From contig CBFDEM010000062.1 in NCBI GenBank assembly GCA_965603825.1, positions 496,001-560,000 of the forward strand: a stretch of DNA of 64,000 nt. Direction: 5' to 3'. The position numbers and the translations under genes were made by a program. Positions 187 to 59,589 of this stretch are shown here, one piece after another (positions within the stretch are counted from its first letter, which is position 1; every line of letters begins with the position of its first letter). Source of the stretch: Blepharisma stoltei ATCC 30299 (taxonomy: Eukaryota > Protista > Ciliophora). The notes under the pieces are model-generated. The model was not told the origin of the DNA. It searched no databases and worked only from the letters and a program-made list of their open reading frames with translations.

Positions 187-433
187 TATTCTTAATAAAT
201 ATATAAACAATTATTAAAGTTATCAAAATCTTCTTATTATATTTTGTTTTTAGTTTCCTATAAACTTGCGATTTTAATAATAATTCTTGATTTTATTAAA
301 AGTTTTTTATTGATAGCAGTTATAAGGATAATTATATAAAATTGTATTTTATATTTTTATTAGATACTCTCTCTTACTTCAAGATACCAAAATAAAAAAC
401 CATAAAAAAACTGATTAACTTATAAATCACATA

Positions 434-3400
434 ATGTCAGTTCATCCAGTCGACGGATCTATTACTGATCTTAGGGCCGAAGAATTCGAAAATTGCCCAA
501 ATGAAGAGACTTTCCTAGACAAATTAGAGAAAAGAAAGCCATCAAGAAAATTTAGTTTGAAATCTCCGGATGTTGATAATGCAAGAAAAATCAGAGTTAA
601 TTCAATTGAACAAAATGAAGCTTTCCCCTCAAATAAAGTACGAACTTCAAAATACTCAATCATTACGTGAGCACCTAAAAGCCTACTCTGACAATTCAGG
701 AGGGTAGCAAATATTTATTTCTTAATTATTTCTATCTTATCGGCAATGCCGTTCTCTCCGAAAAATGCTTTTTCAACTGGTGCCACTTTTGCAGCAGTTC
801 TTGTATTTACTATGATAAAAGAAGCTTATGAAGATTATTTTAGGCATAAGCAAGACAATGCAGTAAATAATATGGAGACTCACATTTTAAACAGAAAATA
901 TAATAAATTTGAAAATGCCCATTGCAAAGATGTAAAGGTCGGTGATATTTTACAAATTAAGGATGGGGAAACTTTCCCAGCGGATTTAGTATTCATTTCT
1001 TCCAGTGATCCAAATGGGCTAGCTTTTGTAAACACAATGAATCTAGACGGAGAAACAAATCTAAAAGAAAGAATTGCATTAGAAAGCACTAAAATCTGCC
1101 AATCCCAATCAGACATTTCCTCTCTTTCCTGCGAAATCTGGTGCGATCAGCCCAATATTTCAATGGTGAAATGAAATTGCAATATAAAATTAACTGAGCA
1201 AGATTGAGAACCAATGAGTATGAAGCAACTGCTAATGAGAGGATGCGTATTAAAAAACGTTGAGTATATATATGGAATTGCTGTTTACACAGGCCATGAC
1301 ACAAAAATTATGCTTAACAGCAAAAAAGCTCCAAGCAAAGTTAGCAATGTTTTGAGGAAAATGAACAGGATTTTGTATACAGTTTTTGCATTCCAAATCG
1401 GAATTTGTGTTTTATTTGCTGGGCTAAGCATGACTTGGAACAAAGAAAATCTTGAAAAGCACGAATATCTGCATCAAAGTAGTTCATCTAGTGGATCAGC
1501 ATTTTTTATTCAAATTCTGACGTATTGGGTAGCTTACTCACACTTGATTCCTATTTCTTTATATGTTGCGCTTGAAGTGATAAAGTTACTTCTTGCTTAC
1601 TTGATTAATCAGGACCTTGAAATGTATTACGAAACTAACGACAAACCTGCGAATTGTCGATCGTCAGATTTAGTAGAAGAATTAGGACAGGTCGAATTCG
1701 TGTTTAGTGACAAAACAGGGACACTTACCTGCAACATCATGGAATTTAGAAAATGCTCTATCAATGGTGTAGTCTATGGAAATACAGGAAGCAAGTTTGG
1801 ACAACTTGATTCTCGTCCAACCTTAATTTTAGCAGACAAAGATCACAAAGAGCATAAAGCTGTCAGCGATTTCTTTAAACTCCTTGCAGTCTGCCACTCT
1901 GTATTCCCAGCAAAAGATAAACAAAACGGCGAAATTCATTATCAAGCCGCCTCACCGGATGAGCTCGCCCTTGTAGAATGCTCTTCATTTATAGGAATAA
2001 AGTTTTATGACAGAAATGATGGAAAAGTCTATCTGGCTTACGAGAATGGGACAACTGAAATATGGGATATTTTGGTGGAAGTGCCATTTAGCAGCGAAAG
2101 GAAAAGAATGTCAGTGATTACGAGGCATCCTCAAACCAAAAAACTTTTACTTATGGTGAAAGGAGCTGATTCTATTATGCTAGGGCTACTGAAAGAGACA
2201 TATTTAAGAGAAACTTATGAAAAGCATTTATATGATTTTGCGGTTGAAGGGTTGAGGACTTTGGTGATGGCCCAACGAGAGATTACAGAGCAAGAATTTG
2301 AACCTTGGTTTTATGACTGGCAAGATATACAGTTGAGCAATTCAAAAGATAAAGAAGAAAGACTAGACCGCCACGCTGCCCAGCTTGAAAAAAATCTTGA
2401 AATTGTTGGATGCTCTGCAATTGAAGATAGGCTTCAAGATGGGGTTCCCTCTACTATAGAATTATTAATGCGAGCTGATATCAGAGTATGGATCCTGACA
2501 GGTGATAAAGAAGAAACTGCTGTTGAAATTGGTAAATCCTGTAACTTAATACAACAAGACATGGAACTAATTGAGCTCTCATCAAACTCTTTTGAAGAAA
2601 TCTCCAATAAACTTAAGGAAAAGAACCAAATTTTTGGAATCGAGCATCTTACTTTTACTGAACTTGATGAAATTAAGAAAAATGTTAAAAAGAAGATAGC
2701 ACTAGTTATAAATGGAAGCACATTGGCGTATGTTTTTGGTGATAAGTCTGGCAAATTGCAGCTTTTATTTTTTAAAATGGGCTATATTTCAGCTTCTTGC
2801 ATTTGCTGCAGGGTATCCCCTGGACAAAAAATGCAGGTCGTGCAGCTTGCAAAAAGAAATGGCTCTTGAATTACTCTTTCAATTGGAGATGGAGCTAATG
2901 ATGTAAGTATGATCCAAGAAGCTCATATAGGAGTTGGCATTGCAGGGCTTGAAGGCACACAAGCTGTACAAGCAGCTGATTTTTCGTTTTCACAGTTTAG
3001 ATATTTAGGAAGGCTTTTGCTAGTTCACGGAAGGCTAGCCTATAGAAGAATATCTTGATTTATTTGTTATTATTTTTATAAAAACATTGTAGTTGTGTTT
3101 ACTGAGATATGATTTGCGTTTTTCAACGGATTTAGTGGACAAATTTATTGGCTGGATTGGCTTCCTATGCTTTACAATGCATTGTGGACCAGCTGGCCTT
3201 GTATGGTCACTTATGTTTTCGAGCAAGACATTGATGCGAAAAACTCAATTAAGTATCCTTTAATCTACGCTGCAGGACAAAGAGGTGTATACTTTACCTT
3301 TAAAAGGTTCTGGATTTGGGTGATCCTTGCTATTTGGCATGGAGCATTCTGCTATTGGGTGCCTATTTATGGACTTGCTGGAGCCACCGATGATAAAGGC

Positions 3401-3778
3401 CATATCGGGGGCTTTAGCTGAACATCGACACTATCATTTACTCTTGTAATCCACCTGATTACCTTAAAGCTTTTTTTAGAAAGCTTTTTCTGGACCAAAA
3501 TTAGCATGTAAGATATATATAGAATCGTTGGATTTGGAAGTATAGCTTTCTATTATCTTTGTGTAATAGTCTTAAACTCTCCTGCTGTAGGCAGCATTTT
3601 TCAGCCAGAAGCTCCATACATATTTTTCAATTTATTATCAAATGAAAAGGTATGGATTACTATTTTAATAGGACCGTTTATTGCTCTTACTCCAGATTTC
3701 ATAATCATTGCGTATAGGATGATTTTTACACCTAACCCTGTAGAGGAGCTGTTAAAATATTTAAGGACTTATTATTAG
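434..3778 (+). CDS. P4-type ATPase (phospholipid flippase); 8 TGA=Trp codons and one 15-nt intron
   Basis: ORF pieces 434, 746, 1214 and 3167 are one frame joined through TGA at 668, 689, 1172, 1205, 2867, 3056, 3110 and 3419. Motifs: [69 protein letters not shown]. Intron 3508-3522 removes an in-frame TAA; stop TAG at 3776-3778. Confidence 0.93.
3508..3522 (+). other. 15-nt spliceosomal intron GTAAGATATATATAG
   Basis: GTA..TAG with A at position 10; contains in-frame TAA; removal restores the last TM helices of the flippase. Confidence 0.88.
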
Positions 3779-54540: not shown

Positions 54541-56289
54541 TTATTTTTTCATGACTGAATTCAGTAATACAAATGATCTTTTCAATCCTTTTAACTCTTT
54601 TTCTAAATCAATTTTCTCGATAAATGTCTTCCTTTGAGGACGAGGAGTTTCTGTAATGTCACTTTTTTCTTTATCAAACTCATGCTTTTCAAGCTCTTTC
54701 TCATATAGAGAAATTATATTTTCATACTTTCGCTTGACGAGCTTTAGTGAGTCAATTTTTTCTAAATATTTTTTTTCTTTTGCAATCATATCTGATTTTA
54801 TCATTTTAATTTCATGTTGAGCTTCTATATTTTCTGCTTTATTTACTCTCTCTTGGTCAAGCTCTAGCTTGATTTCTTTAATTTTTTCATTATTTGCTCC
54901 TACTACTCATTCACAAAGAAGGAAAATCCCTTTTAAGCATTTTTCTAGAGCTGTAGAATACTCTGGGATAAACTCCGCAATCCCTCGAATAATTATCCGT
55001 AAATGTCTTGAATATTCCCCTATTCAATACTCAACCTTTTTACTAAGTTCTTCATTATTTATCTTTTCGTTGCATTGATTTTCTAATAATGATAAAATGT
55101 CTCTATTAAAATATTTTGCTTTTTCTTTCATTTTTTTACAGACTTGGAGAAGCTCTTCAGGGGTTGGCTCTACAATATTTTCTGTTTTTTCTGGGCTATA
55201 GGCTGTTAGCTCATCATTTTTGTTACTGATTGTAATTCTATCATGAAATGAGTCACTTTCATATAACATTAAATTTGGTAAAATAATTTTTATAGGTGAT
55301 CCGAGCTTTAAATTTCATTTTTTGCCATATCCTGAAATAGCTAAAGTATTAGAAGTTTCAATATCTTCTTTAAGATCTTTCAATGAAAATTTTTGTCTTA
55401 CTTTTCGAGCTGTTGAAGGTCTGCTTGGCATACTCCTCTCTGTTAATAAGCCTAAGTCCTCCGTATTTTTTCTATGTGTACTAGGAGGCTTTGGTATTGA
55501 TATATTTTTACTATCACATTGAATCATCAAGCAAACTCCCTCAATTCTATTAGGCTCTTTTCCAGTTTCGCAATCCTTGCATATGAACAACTCATTCTTT
55601 GTATTCAAATAATACGAATTTCCACATTTCTCGCATTTCTCTATAAATCCAAGAAAAGAAAAATCAATTACTTGATTTTCTGAGGTTTTTTTATTAGTAA
55701 ACGTCTTCTCGATGTTTTTGGTCATCTGGTTAATGTCACAAGTATTATGTTTTGGCTCTGTTATCATTGAATATAATATTTTTGATAAAAAATTAGGCGA
55801 ATTTGGTTTTGATGCAATGTCATAATTGTAATCAATCAAGGAAATAAGGTTGTTTAGATGGTTCATTTTAGATAAAATCATTTTATGGATGTTTTCTTCA
55901 ATTTCAAGTACTTTTTGGTACTCTTGAAGGAATGGAGACTCTTCAAGCATATCTGTAACTTCTCTGACATGGGCTAAATATTCATCATGTTTTCGTCTTT
56001 CTTCGTCTTCTTGTGAACAGAATATTTTCATAAGGAGATCGTTAGGGGTAATTGATCGTTGCTCTATCATTCTGTCATAAGGCTTAGCACTTTGTGCTCT
56101 TTTTGCAGGAGAGTTTTCATTAGATAATGATGCTTGTGATGGTGTAAATCTTTTCATTCTTTTGAAGCTTTGAGGCCTGATCTGGATTTGTGGACTAATT
56201 TTTTTGTCGTTTATGTTAAGCTTTGATATAAATTCAGCAAAACGTTTGGAGCTTATATTTAGATTTGATGTCTGCTGACTTTTCAACAT
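54541..56289 (-). CDS. Hypothetical protein (582 aa) with a CxxC..CxxC motif and C-terminal coiled coil; 3 TGA=Trp codons
   Basis: ORFs 55315-56289, 55024-55269 and 54541-54804 are in one frame separated only by TGA; CEKC..CKDC motif. Confidence 0.72.
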
Positions 56290-56392: not shown

Positions 56393-57142
56393 ATGTCAAA
56401 GCTCGATGAAAAAATATCAGATCTTTTAGTGCTCTCAATTGCTGGGTCTCAAAAAGAGCAGAAATCAGCAGAAGCAGAGCTTGAGATTCTTAGCCAAGAC
56501 AAGAAATCAATATTTACAATTTTAAGCAGATTATTAGCAAATCCAGATACTCCACAGATTCTTAAAAGTTCAGCTGCCTTTCACTTAAGACAAACAATTA
56601 GAAAGGCAATTGAATGCAATGAACTCGACTCAGAGGTTCGCCACTTATTATTTAACTCTATTTCAGCTGCATTAGTAAGTCAAAACTTGGATACAGTCAC
56701 TAAAGGGGCTTTACAATATTCCCTAAATCTTGTTATTACTGGGGAGTGAATAGAATCATTAAAGCCCTCTAAAGAAAAATTAGAGGAAAATAAAGCATCA
56801 TCTGTAGGAAAAAAGAGTGCAAAGAAATCTAAAGAAAGCCTACAATTTTCAGCTCAATCTGTATCTAAAATCATGAAAAAATTCAAAATAACTAAACGAA
56901 TCGGATCTGGCGCTCCTGTTTACCTCGCTGCTGTTTTAGAATTTTTAGCTTCAGAAATGCTTGAGCTTGCAGGAAATGCTGCAAAGGATTACAAAAAATC
57001 TAGAATTGTTCCTAAACACATACAATTTGCAATTAGAAAAAACAAAGAACTGAGTAAGCTAATTATGAATAAAAGTATTGAAGAAAATATAGCAAACATT
57101 TTAGAAAGGCAGAAAAAAGATGCAGAAACTCATGAGCATTAA
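56393..57142 (+). CDS. Fusion of an importin-beta N-terminal-like helical domain and a divergent histone H2A (249 aa)
   Basis: ORFs 56393-56749 and 56873-57142 share a frame with only TGA 56747-56749 between them. H2A core [49 protein letters not shown]. Confidence 0.82.
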
Positions 57143-57306: not shown

Positions 57307-58479
57307 TTAAGTCAAAATATCTTTAACCAATTCCACCCAATAAGAAGCACCTATGAGCATGGCTCTCTCATCAAAATCAAACGTTGAAGAATGAAGGTGA
57401 GATGTATGCTGGCTATCCCCACACCCCATCATAATAAAGCATCCAGGCTTTTTCTCAGTGAAATATGAAAAGTCTTCTCCAATTAGAGGTGATAAGTTAT
57501 TAATATTCGCTCCAGGACAGATTTTCTTAAATGCATTCCCTGCTATTTGTGATGGTTCTGGAGAATTTATTGTTGGTGGGTAATAATTTTGAAACTCCAG
57601 CTTTATTTCACATCCAAAGCTTATTTCTGATCCTCTACAGAAATTCGTTATTCTTTTTTCTATCGTTTCCTTTGTTTCAGGCTCAAAACATCTAATAGTT
57701 CCACTAATTTTACAAATATGTGGAATTGCGTTAAAAACTTCTCCAGAATGAAATGTTGTTACTGCAATTGAGGCCTTTGTTTGAGGGTCTACATATTTTG
57801 ACAATATTGTATTAATATCTAGTACAATATGAGCTCCCGCATGTATAGGATCAATAGATAAATGAGGTGTTGAAGCATGTCCACCTTTGCCTATAATATC
57901 AATATAAAAATAACTACTATAGCAAGAGGCATATTTTGATGAAATCAGCACATCGCCGATTTTTTCGCTAGCTGTTATATGAAGCCCGTATACTTGTTCA
58001 ACATCCGGGTTTTCAAGCGCGGGATAAAGAGGGTCATTTATCATGGCCTGAGCTCCAAATTCTCCTTCTTCAGCAGGCTGGAATAAGAATTTCAAGCTTC
58101 CTTTCAGTTTTTCTCTGAAGTTTGATATTACCTTGGCTGCTATGAGAAGCATTGCGACATGAGCATCATGCCCGCATGCATGCATCCGACCTTGTATTTG
58201 GGACTTATACTCTACATTATTTTCTTCTTGGATTGCTAATGCATCCATATCTGCTCTTAATAGGTAGCAAGGGCCTCCGTCAGATTTCAGCACCCCAATG
58301 ACGCCTGATCTGCCAACTTGCGAGTAAACTTCGACACCTGATAAGGAACTTAAATATGTTGTAACTAAACTTGTTGTATTTGGAAGCTCATACAAGAGCT
58401 CAGGATTTTTATGAATCTCTCGCCGAATTGTTTTCATCTCATCAAAAAGTTCTAAAACATGAGAATTTATGTTTTCCAT
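57307..58479 (-). CDS. M20D amidohydrolase (ILR1/hippuricase-like)
   Basis: RREIHKNPEL, LRADMDAL, MHACGHDAH, FQPAEEG, GKGGHA, GEDF, HLHS; ATG at 58479. Confidence 0.93.
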   Translation of the reverse strand: MENINSHVLELFDEMKTIRREIHKNPELLYELPNTTSLVTTYLSSLSGVEVYSQVGRSGVIGVLKSDGGPCYLLRADMDALAIQEENNVEYKSQIQGRMHACGHDAHVAMLLIAAKVISNFREKLKGSLKFLFQPAEEGEFGAQAMINDPLYPALENPDVEQVYGLHITASEKIGDVLISSKYASCYSSYFYIDIIGKGGHASTPHLSIDPIHAGAHIVLDINTILSKYVDPQTKASIAVTTFHSGEVFNAIPHICKISGTIRCFEPETKETIEKRITNFCRGSEISFGCEIKLEFQNYYPPTINSPEPSQIAGNAFKKICPGANINNLSPLIGEDFSYFTEKKPGCFIMMGCGDSQHTSHLHSSTFDFDERAMLIGASYWVELVKDILT

Positions 58480-59589
58480 AGATGTTGATAAAAAAATAAG
58501 TATCAAGGAAATGAATAATTACCATATTGAAATGATTACGATTGAAAGTTTACTACGAATAAGTTTTTATAAATAATTAATTTGGATATTTCAGAAACTA
58601 ATCCATAATTCTTCTTGAAATTATTTTAAATTTTATTCGAAGTTTTCAAGCATTGAATTTGGAAAATCATTAATATTTGCAATTCTAGGAAGCTCAAGCT
58701 TATTAACTTGTCTTCATAATAAGTAATATAAGTATTAGTGTTATTGATGACTGGCAAAATTCGTTTATTTTTGGTTTTAAGTTAATTTAATTTTAAAATT
58801 ACGTCATTTACTTTATTATGGCTTTATAAAAAAAGCATCTTTAAATAATGTATTTCTGTCATTTTAAGTATAAAATATTGGTAAGAAAATAAAAGTTGAG
58901 CTTTGAATTTTATCAATGTTATAGTAAATTAGATTAATAAAAGAATTCCTCAAGAACGTCAGAATATTTAACAATTCGCTTGAAACTTTTTCAAATATTC
59001 CTAAATTCGCAGATAAATATCGAAGTTGAAGCAAGAAAGAGAGTGCATAGCTGAAATCAAAGTTCTTTATATTTTAATTAAAATTTTAAAGTATTTTCTG
59101 TCGAAGTTATAAATTATTACACTTTTCAATTTTATTCATTTATCTAGTTTGAGAGTATTTAATGGAAGAAACTGAAATTAAAAAACCAAAAATTTTTATG
59201 ATCTTGGCTGTGGCCGTACAGAAGGATAGGTTTAGAGTCTCAATTAATAATTTAGATCAAAAAAACTCTTTACTTTCTATTTCTTATTGGCTTTTCTCTA
59301 ATGCTAATTTTAGAATTCGTTAGTTCAAAATTATTAACTGAGCCTCAGATATTAAAATTGGTATTTTAGATACTTACATATATTTTCCTCTCCTTTATAT
59401 AATTATGAAAAATTGCAGCAGGGATAAAATTGACTCAGGAATGATGGAGTATTTATTATTCATTATTTCAATACAATTATAAACCTCAATTAAATGGCTC
59501 ATAGTTTGCTTTCTCAGCCTGGCTCTAATAAGTCCTAATTACTTTTTAAGTTAAGCTCATTTGTTGCTAATATATGGTTTCTAATAAAA

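What the first reader, a model, noticed from the sequence alone, without database searches (positions are those of the whole stretch)
56393..57142. Importin-beta-N-like domain fused to a divergent histone H2A, hidden by a UGA codon
Seen: one frame from ATG 56393 to TAA 57140-57142, broken only by TGA 56747. It encodes about 118 aa of helical sequence, a K/S-rich linker ([15 protein letters not shown]) and then a clear H2A fold starting at LQF, upstream of the ATG where the ORF track restarts. The N-terminal part ([35 protein letters not shown]) resembles the IBN_N first HEAT repeats of importin-beta karyopherins; this is my pattern recognition. Established: IBN_N contacts RanGTP, and importin-9/Kap114 imports and chaperones H2A-H2B. 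Inference: an H2A variant with a globular N-terminal domain, the mirror image of macroH2A, possibly tying chromatin to Ran or nuclear transport in a cell with two kinds of nuclei. I know of no described H2A with this architecture.
Basis: partly seen in the sequence, partly recalled or inferred. Interest (0 to 1): 0.85.

Follow-up and report, generated by a model that had tools for sequence, protein, structure and literature searches.

The report
Importin-fragment–histone H2A fusion gene
A ciliate (Blepharisma-type genome) has one selectively maintained gene that joins the first three HEAT repeats of an importin-7-like nuclear transport receptor to a divergent histone H2A, a pairing I found in no paper searched; its function is untested.

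Summary
ATG 56393 to TAA 57140-57142 is one 249-codon frame with a single TGA (56747). TGA is an ordinary Trp codon in this genome, so nothing is really hidden.

- **N-terminal domain.** Residues 1-118 are a true paralogue of the N-terminus of the genome's own ~1070-aa importin-7-like proteins (39% identity, BLASTP E 5e-19). The model is three HEAT repeats (pLDDT 91.6). It superposes on residues ~1-120 of karyopherin-beta proteins (Z 12-15.5).
- **Histone part.** After a disordered basic linker comes an H2A fold, 57% identical to canonical H2A. Helix alpha1 straddles the internal ATG, so only the fused frame gives a complete fold.
- **Orthologue.** A deeply diverged relative (Logan SRR24908292) has the same fusion with TGA at the same codon. 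Synonymous sites are saturated (pS ~0.8). pN is 0.31 in the HEAT part and 0.11 in the H2A fold, so both parts are under purifying selection.
- **Changed H2A features.** Alpha1 arginines are lost, the acidic patch is weakened, and the docking domain is 5 aa shorter.

The scan had already noted other histone fusions in this genome, but not this one. Verdict: a real gene, a new variant of the domain-fused histone kind.

The parts
56393..57142 (+). Whole coding sequence of the fusion gene: 249 codons plus TAA, read with TGA=Trp
   Evidence: The orthologue with the same layout is L030:305-997.
56393..56746 (+). N-terminal domain, aa 1-118: HEAT repeats 1-3 (IBN_N-type), derived from an importin-7-like paralogue
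   Evidence: Own-genome hits to the N-termini of ~1070-aa importins, best E 7e-15. BLASTP E 5e-19 at 39% identity. Pfam IBN_N E 0.006. AF2 pLDDT 91.6 with six helices. Z 15.5-12 onto karyopherin residues ~1-120. 57% identical to orthologue P0001.
56747..56749 (+). TGA codon read as Trp119, at the junction of the HEAT module and the linker
   Evidence: TGA=Trp is shown in window genes. The orthologue also has TGA at the homologous codon (TGEW[IF]ESL).
56750..56839 (+). Basic K/S-rich linker (aa 120-149), probably the remnant of the H2A N-tail
   Evidence: pLDDT below 50. Net charge +4. 12 codons shorter but in frame in the orthologue. The frame is open in only 5% of shuffles.
56840..57067 (+). 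H2A histone fold (aa 150-225): LQF motif, alpha1, L1, alpha2, L2, alpha3/alphaC
   Evidence: Pfam Histone E 5e-13. 57% identity to the genome's canonical H2As. 86% identity to the orthologue with pN 0.11. Nested in the canonical H2A group. Helices from the model.
56873..56875 (+). Internal ATG (Met161) where the standard-code ORF track restarts. It lies inside helix alpha1 and is unlikely to be a real start.
   Evidence: Alpha1 is C-piece residues 35-44 and Met is residue 42. No other Met lies between the TGA and this ATG in either species.
57068..57139 (+). Divergent C-terminal region (aa 226-249) replacing the canonical docking domain and tail, with a 5-aa deletion
   Evidence: Alignment A3. 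No Histone_H2A_C (PF16211) match. Predicted as a helix at low confidence. 39% identity to the orthologue.

Best explanation
**What it is (shown or strongly supported, about 0.9).** This is one gene encoding a 249-aa lineage-specific H2A variant. It arose when the 5' end of an importin-7-like gene (start codon plus HEAT repeats 1-3) became joined in frame to a duplicate of a canonical H2A. UGA is simply Trp119. The fusion predates the split of two deeply diverged Blepharisma-type lineages, and purifying selection has acted on both halves since.

**How it most likely works (inferred, about 0.3-0.4).**
- The near-canonical alpha2-L2-alpha3 core pairs with H2B.
- The dimer enters chromatin as a weakly anchored, 'short-H2A-like' nucleosome component. 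Alpha1 arginines are lost, the acidic patch is changed from NDEE to KNKE, and the docking domain is shortened.
- A ~30-aa flexible basic linker holds a folded three-HEAT module where the H2A N-tail normally exits.
- That module is the part of karyopherins that contacts RanGTP. RanGTP is therefore the leading candidate ligand, and the protein would act as a chromatin-borne docking site for the Ran/transport system.
For: - **Single frame and code:**
- **Importin origin of the N part:** own-genome paralogues at E 7e-15 and 1e-13 with a gapless alignment over all 118 aa. The paralogues carry IBN_N plus Cse1 domains, and their profile hits Xenopus importin 7 (6n88) at E 4e-42. The N-domain tree nests the fusion in one importin-7 subgroup (99/99).
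- **Fold:** pLDDT 91.6 with 3 HEAT repeats. Z 15.5-12 and rmsd 2.0-2.6 A on 110-115 residues, always onto karyopherin N-termini, including Ran complexes of Cse1, Kap114, Kap95 and TNPO3.
- **H2A part:** Pfam E 5e-13. It sits in the canonical H2A group at 91/97.
- **Translation through the junction:** H2A homology and helix alpha1 lie upstream of the only downstream Met. The Pfam score rises from 42.1 to 49.8 bits when the pre-ATG stretch is included.
- **Conservation:** orthologue L030:305-997 has the same order, the same TGA position and an in-frame 12-codon linker indel. pS is about 0.8 (saturated) against pN 0.31 for the N part and 0.11 for H2A. The parent importin between the same two organisms has pN 0.19 (N part) and 0.26 (rest).
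- **Transcription:** an MMETSP transcript ORF is 96% identical to the C part (P0007).
Against:
- The N-part ORF was not found among MMETSP or other proteins. The only transcript evidence therefore covers the H2A part.
- Pfam IBN_N is below its gathering score.
- Three HEAT repeats are only one of the Ran contact areas of full-length karyopherins, so stable Ran binding by this fragment is doubtful (my knowledge of importin-beta:Ran structures).
- The fused N domain evolves faster than the parent's N domain (57% against 75% identity). That fits a changed ligand.
- Loss of alpha1 arginines, two acidic-patch residues and part of the docking domain could mean it never enters nucleosomes.
Confidence: 0.55

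Rival explanations
1. The fusion protein is real but not nucleosomal. The histone fold serves only to capture H2B, or an H2B-like partner such as the TPR-H2B fusion of the same genome. The result is a soluble heterodimer that works as a chaperone, decoy or regulator in the histone-supply or Ran/karyopherin pathway.
For: DNA- and nucleosome-contact features are degraded while the H2B-pairing core is near-canonical. PVGR becomes SAQS/SVNL in alpha1, NDEE becomes KNKE, the docking domain has a 5-aa deletion, and PF16211 is absent. The same genome holds several other histone-fold fusions to repeat scaffolds.
Against: The L2 arginine (RIVP) and the KRIG L1 arginine are kept, and net charge of the fold is +10. 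Mammalian short H2As with similar losses still form nucleosomes (my knowledge). There is no direct test either way.
Confidence: 0.3
2. These are two separate genes or products: a 118-aa importin-N fragment ending at UGA, and an 89-aa truncated H2A starting at ATG 56873.
For: A standard-code ORF track shows exactly this. The MMETSP ORF P0007 is called 'complete' at 89 aa, and no N-part ORF was found in that resource.
Against: UGA encodes Trp genome-wide. An 89-aa product would start inside helix alpha1. H2A homology continues 30 aa upstream of that ATG in both species. The frame and the TGA position are conserved across saturated divergence. A 'complete' call by a standard-code ORF finder in fact requires an upstream in-frame stop, which here would be the TGA itself.
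Confidence: 0.05
3. It is a decaying or neutral chimera: a by-product of segmental duplication with no function of its own.
For: The N part is only a fragment of its parent. The H2A part sits on a long stem branch (1.26). Linker and C-tail are poorly conserved (32% and 39% identity).
Against: The intact orthologue has saturated synonymous sites but pN of 0.31 and 0.11. All core positions invariant among importin-7 paralogues are retained. The N domain gives a confident fold. There are no stops or frameshifts in either species.
Confidence: 0.05

Closest known systems
[quoted passage not shown] 2012, PMC3380720)
   Same: It is a ciliate H2A variant that carries a folded, repeat-type protein-binding domain in addition to a divergent H2A fold. 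From my memory, not checked here, its extra domain is also N-terminal.
   Different: The partner domain is LRR, not HEAT/IBN_N. No LRR Pfam match occurs here. The two have independent origins, since this H2A part nests within heterotrich canonical H2As.
macroH2A (animals)
   Same: An H2A fold joined by a basic linker to a globular ligand-binding domain.
   Different: The macro domain is C-terminal and binds ADP-ribose derivatives, and the family is restricted to animals. Here the domain is N-terminal and karyopherin-derived.
Importin-7 / karyopherin-beta N-terminal (IBN_N, PF03810) region
   Same: Homologous sequence (39% identity to the genome's own importin-7-like protein). The same three-HEAT fold at the same N-terminal position.
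   Different: Only 118 of ~1070 residues are present. The cargo-binding and nucleoporin-binding arches and the further Ran contact areas are missing, so it cannot be a transport receptor.
Importin-9/Kap114 with H2A-H2B and RanGTP (PMC6453568, PMC9901172, PMC10629556)
   Same: It brings together a karyopherin N-terminus, Ran and H2A-H2B. The model superposes on Kap114 and Imp9 N-termini at Z 15.0-12.4.
   Different: There the association is non-covalent and uses the whole 19-20 HEAT solenoid. Here a fragment is covalently fused, and the donor is importin-7-like, not importin-9.
Mammalian short H2A variants (H2A.B, H2A.L and relatives)
   Same: Weakened acidic patch and shortened docking domain.
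   Different: They are unrelated by descent and carry no added domain. The comparison is one of features only and rests on my knowledge of those variants.
Other histone-fold fusions of Blepharisma stoltei
   Same: Same genome, same theme: a histone fold at the C-terminus of a larger scaffold.
   Different: Different partner domains and different histone classes. None of them contains IBN_N.

Membership tests
IBN_N domain (PF03810) | Pfam score at or above the gathering cut-off | tested here: not met
   17.0 bits against a cut-off of 21, E 0.006. The match covers profile positions 1-71 of 73.
IBN_N domain (PF03810) | Significant sequence homology to the N-terminus of bona fide IBN_N-bearing karyopherins | tested here: met
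   E 7e-15 and 1e-13 to own-genome ~1070-aa proteins. BLASTP E 5e-19. The best paralogue passes IBN_N at 32.5 bits and also carries a Cse1 domain.
IBN_N domain (PF03810) | HEAT-repeat fold superposable on karyopherin residues ~1-120 | tested here: met
   pLDDT 91.6 with six helices. Z 15.5-12 and rmsd 2.0-2.6 A over 110-115 residues. Foldseek TM 0.69-0.79.
IBN_N domain (PF03810) | Binds RanGTP | not testable with these tools
   Needs a binding assay or a multimer model of the full protein.
Karyopherin-beta transport receptor (importin-7 family) | Complete solenoid of about 19-20 HEAT repeats (~900-1100 aa) with cargo and nucleoporin sites | tested here: not met
   Homology to the paralogues stops at residue ~118. 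The rest of the protein is linker plus histone fold.
Histone H2A | Histone fold (PF00125) above the cut-off | tested here: met
   49.8 bits against a cut-off of 26.4, E 5e-13.
Histone H2A | Groups with H2A, not with other histone classes or H2A.Z, in a tree | tested here: met
   It lies inside the canonical H2A group (91/97), apart from three H2A.Z-like genes (100/98). It is 57% identical to canonical H2As.
Histone H2A | H2A C-terminal/docking domain (PF16211) | tested here: not met
   No PF16211 hit at E up to 10. The precomputed domains of P0007 and P0008 list PF00125 only, while canonical H2As list PF16211. There is a 5-aa deletion.
Histone H2A | H2A signature AGLxFPV ahead of alpha1 (PROSITE motif, recalled from memory) | tested here: not met
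   The sequences read SLQFSA and TLNFSV in place of AGLQFPV.
Histone H2A | Dimerises with H2B and is incorporated into nucleosomes | not testable with these tools
   The alpha2-L2-alpha3 core is near-identical to canonical H2A, but there is no biochemical test.
macroH2A | C-terminal macro domain | tested here: not met
   No macro domain in the Pfam scan. The extra domain is N-terminal.
H2A.Y (Tetrahymena) | Leucine-rich-repeat domain | tested here: not met
   No LRR match. The N domain is HEAT-type.

The most novel reading that the evidence does not exclude
The protein is a self-chaperoned, Ran-gated histone. The fused HEAT1-3 module folds back over the DNA-binding face of its own H2A-H2B dimer, as the N-terminal repeats of importin-9/Kap114 do in trans. 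Nuclear RanGTP binding to the module then releases that face for deposition. In a cell with germline and somatic nuclei, and alongside the genome's GLFG-H3, TPR-H2B and ARM-H2A fusions, this would be part of a histone system wired directly into nucleus-specific transport.
Probability: 0.1. Interest if true: 0.85.

Novelty: new variant of a known kind. Interest (0 to 1): 0.62.

Why it matters
Histone variants with an added globular domain are rare: macroH2A in animals and H2A.Y in Tetrahymena. Each has revealed a new way of coupling chromatin to cell physiology.

Here the added domain is the Ran-contacting end of a nuclear import receptor. It is fused to the very histone class that karyopherins import and chaperone, and selection has kept it across a deep divergence.

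If the module still binds RanGTP, this would be a natural case of Ran-system components built into a nucleosome subunit. That bears on how chromatin marks itself for the Ran gradient, normally through RCC1 on the H2A-H2B acidic patch. It also bears on how ciliates tell their two kinds of nuclei apart.

Even if it does not bind Ran, the gene gives a clean, datable example of domain capture creating a new histone variant. It adds to a striking set of histone-fold fusions in Blepharisma.

Tried and rejected
- **Exact look-ups.** Neither standard-code piece was on any public contig on record.
- **Word-indexed protein search with the N piece.** It found nothing. The exhaustive HMMER search then found the orthologue P0001.
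- **PDB sequence search.** The single importin paralogue found nothing. A four-paralogue profile then hit importin 7.
- **JGI metagenomes.** Two scans gave no orthologue, only 33-37% H2A relatives.
- **Tiny-intron reading.** Six GT..AG candidates of 15-18 nt lie in the CDS. The 15-nt one just before the TGA is coding, and lacks GT..AG, in the orthologue. So the TGA is not intronic.
- **Synteny.** The downstream neighbour is not conserved.
- **Errors of mine.** The first H2A tree used a wrong frame offset for L030 and is superseded.
- **Left out.** Only its two pieces were used, so no model of the whole protein or of domain-domain contacts exists.

Full report
**1. The observation**

The window reads ATG at 56393 and stays in one frame to TAA 57140-57142. 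One TGA lies at 56747-56749. The bacterial-code ORF list splits this into a 118-aa ORF (56393-56749) and an 89-aa ORF (56873-57142).

The TGA is not a stop in this organism:
- The P4-ATPase-like gene at 419-3511 has eight in-frame TGA at Trp-type positions.
- ORFs of 2,900 and 2,850 codons are interrupted only by one or two TGA.
- Nearly all long frames end in TAA or TAG.
- Long frames hold 50 TGA against 107 TGG.

The genome is 41.46 Mb in 64 contigs. This fits the published 41-Mb Blepharisma stoltei ATCC 30299 somatic assembly, which uses UGA=Trp and has 15-16-nt introns. The gene is therefore a plain 249-codon ORF. 'Hidden by UGA' describes the ORF track, not the biology.

None of six GT..AG candidates of 15-18 nt inside the CDS is credible. 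The one abutting the TGA is coding, and lacks GT..AG, in the orthologue.

**2. The N-terminal part is a piece of an importin**

Pfam alone gives IBN_N below threshold: E 0.006, 17 bits against a cut-off of 21, though over 71 of 73 profile positions.

Searching the organism's own genome was decisive. Residues 1-118 match the extreme N-termini of at least seven open frames of about 650-1130 aa. The best are contig 13 (E 7e-15, 39% identity) and contig 54 (E 1e-13). Pairwise BLASTP gives E 5e-19.

- Five of these genes were fetched. They are 1027-1074 aa.
- The closest has IBN_N (32.5 bits) and a Cse1 domain.
- A profile of four of them hits Xenopus importin 7 (PDB 6n88) at E 4e-42. Importin-9 scores only E 0.002.
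- The alignment of the fusion's 118 residues to these N-termini is essentially gapless. It keeps every column that is invariant among the paralogues.
- In a tree the fusion N domains sit inside one importin-7 subgroup (99/99).

AlphaFold2 on this alignment gives pLDDT 91.6 and six helices, that is three HEAT repeats. Foldseek's top hits are almost all karyopherin N-termini, with TM 0.69-0.79 but weak E-values. VIA-align gives Z 15.5-12 and rmsd 2.0-2.6 A over 110-115 residues. It always aligns to residues ~1-120 of transportin, Cse1, Kap114, importin-9, Kap95, Kap121, TNPO3 and importin-13. Z values of this size can occur among helical repeats in general. What counts is the consistent N-terminal register together with the sequence homology.

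**3. The C-terminal part is a divergent H2A whose fold needs the upstream frame**

The 130 residues after the TGA match Pfam Histone at E 5e-13 (49.8 bits). The 89-aa piece from the internal ATG scores only 42.1 bits.

In the genome, the best matches are five canonical H2A genes (51-57% identity over residues 8-110), then H2A.Z-like and more divergent genes. The tree places the fusion's H2A part in the canonical H2A group (91/97), on a long stem (1.26), away from H2A.Z.

The model shows three things:
- a disordered linker (pLDDT below 50 for C-piece residues 1-25);
- helix alpha1 at C-piece residues 35-44, which contains the internal Met (residue 42);
- a long alpha2.

No other Met lies between the TGA and that ATG in either species. 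A complete histone fold can therefore only be made by translating from 56393 through the TGA.

Compared with canonical H2A:
- The alpha2-L2-alpha3 core is nearly unchanged.
- The AGLQFPVGR segment becomes SLQFSAQS, so the arginines are lost.
- NDEE at the end of alpha3 becomes KNKE. By my numbering from memory, two of six acidic-patch residues are replaced by Asn and Lys.
- Five residues of the docking domain are deleted.
- The H2A C-terminal Pfam domain is not detected.

**4. Conservation**

The exhaustive HMMER search with the N piece found only six proteins. The best is a 117-aa ORF, 57% identical. It lies on an 11.9-kb Logan contig of run SRR24908292 and is followed 87 nt later by a histone ORF.

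Read in one frame, that locus (L030:305-997) has the same order:
- the HEAT module;
- TGA at the homologous codon (TGEW[IF]ESL);
- a linker 12 codons shorter but in frame;
- the H2A fold;
- a short basic tail.

The organism is deeply diverged. Its orthologue of the parent importin is 61% identical to that of the window's genome.

| Region (between the two organisms) | aa identity | pN | pS |
|---|---|---|---|
| Fusion HEAT module | 57% | 0.31 | 0.76-0.83 throughout (saturated) |
| Fusion H2A fold | 86% | 0.11 | same |
| Parent importin, N-terminal 119 codons | 75% | 0.19 | same |
| Parent importin, remainder | 60% | 0.26 | same |

Both halves of the fusion are thus under purifying selection. 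The HEAT module is constrained about as much as an average stretch of a working importin.

The linker frames are open in only 5% and 14% of shuffles, while the other frames carry stops.

An MMETSP transcript ORF is 96% identical to the 89-aa piece, so the H2A part is transcribed in a close relative. That it was called 'complete' by a standard-code ORF finder implies an in-frame stop upstream, which would be the TGA. This hints that the transcript reaches back into the HEAT part, but it is weak evidence. No N-part ORF from that resource was found.

No orthologue appeared among Stentor proteins in the protein searches or in JGI metagenomes. The fusion looks confined to the Blepharisma lineage.

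**5. What could not be done**

There is therefore no read-level proof of a single mRNA and no expression profile. Only its pieces were used, so contacts between the two domains were not modelled.

**6. Mechanism**

Shown:
- one conserved ORF;
- an importin-7-derived three-HEAT module;
- a flexible basic linker (net +4);
- an H2A fold with an intact H2B-pairing core and degraded nucleosome-anchoring features.

Inferred: the protein pairs with H2B and places the HEAT module where the H2A N-tail leaves the nucleosome.

The only established ligand of this part of karyopherins is RanGTP, from my knowledge of importin-beta, Cse1 and Kap114 complexes. Several of these are among the structural matches. 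RanGTP is therefore the first ligand to test. Against this, full-length receptors use further contact areas, and the module evolves faster than its parent.

A soluble, non-nucleosomal role as chaperone or decoy is the main rival. Two separate genes, or a decaying chimera, are unlikely.

**7. Comparison with the known, and novelty**

The B. stoltei genome paper reports eleven H2A genes and two H3 genes with VIT-VWA domains. It does not mention an importin-H2A fusion. That is understandable, since IBN_N is sub-threshold in Pfam. Literature searches for such a fusion found none.

Domain-bearing H2A variants do exist:
- macroH2A;
- Tetrahymena H2A.Y, with a leucine-rich-repeat domain.

This scan has also noted TPR-H2B, ARM-like-H2A and VIT-vWA-GLFG-H3 fusions in the same genome. 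I met the ARM-like one independently as L024.

The finding is therefore a new variant of a known kind. It is real and conserved, with an unprecedented and suggestive partner domain, and its function is still open.

Noticed in passing
L024 (G000:C39:418121-421378), + strand frame 1-1809, first ATG 268: This is a second, much longer H2A-fold fusion in the same genome. About 380 aa of helical-repeat-like sequence (weak Pfam Xpo1 match, E 0.0014, below cut-off) is followed by a Q/N/P-rich stretch, a basic tail and a histone fold (Pfam Histone E 2e-6). There is one in-frame TGA. Its N part has no clear paralogue in the genome (best E 0.003). It appears to be the 'giant ARM-like H2A' already noted by the scan.
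   Followed up: partly
window 419-3511 (+): A P4-ATPase-like (flippase) gene with eight in-frame TGA codons at Trp-type positions. It is the clearest in-window proof that TGA=Trp.
   Followed up: partly
L025-L029 (G000 contigs 13, 54, 11, 37, 62): The genome carries at least five full-length importin-7-like paralogues of 1027-1074 aa, only 29-33% identical to each other. One (L029, C62:487800-492300) lies about 60 kb upstream of the fusion gene on the same contig. It is not the closest relative of the fused fragment.
   Followed up: partly
L023 (G000:C4:330501-330671, - strand): An H2A-like fragment with an in-frame TAA that breaks off after alpha2. It is probably an H2A pseudogene.
   Followed up: no
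L030:1006-2223 versus window 57307-58506: The gene downstream of the fusion differs between the two organisms. It is an M20-peptidase-like gene in the window and an unrelated 405-aa ORF in the orthologous contig. Local synteny is therefore not conserved although the fusion gene is.
   Followed up: partly
window 55315-56289 (-): The divergently oriented upstream neighbour is a 324-aa ORF with a Cys-rich C-terminal segment. It lies only about 100 nt from the fusion gene's ATG, so the two genes must share a very short promoter region.
   Followed up: no
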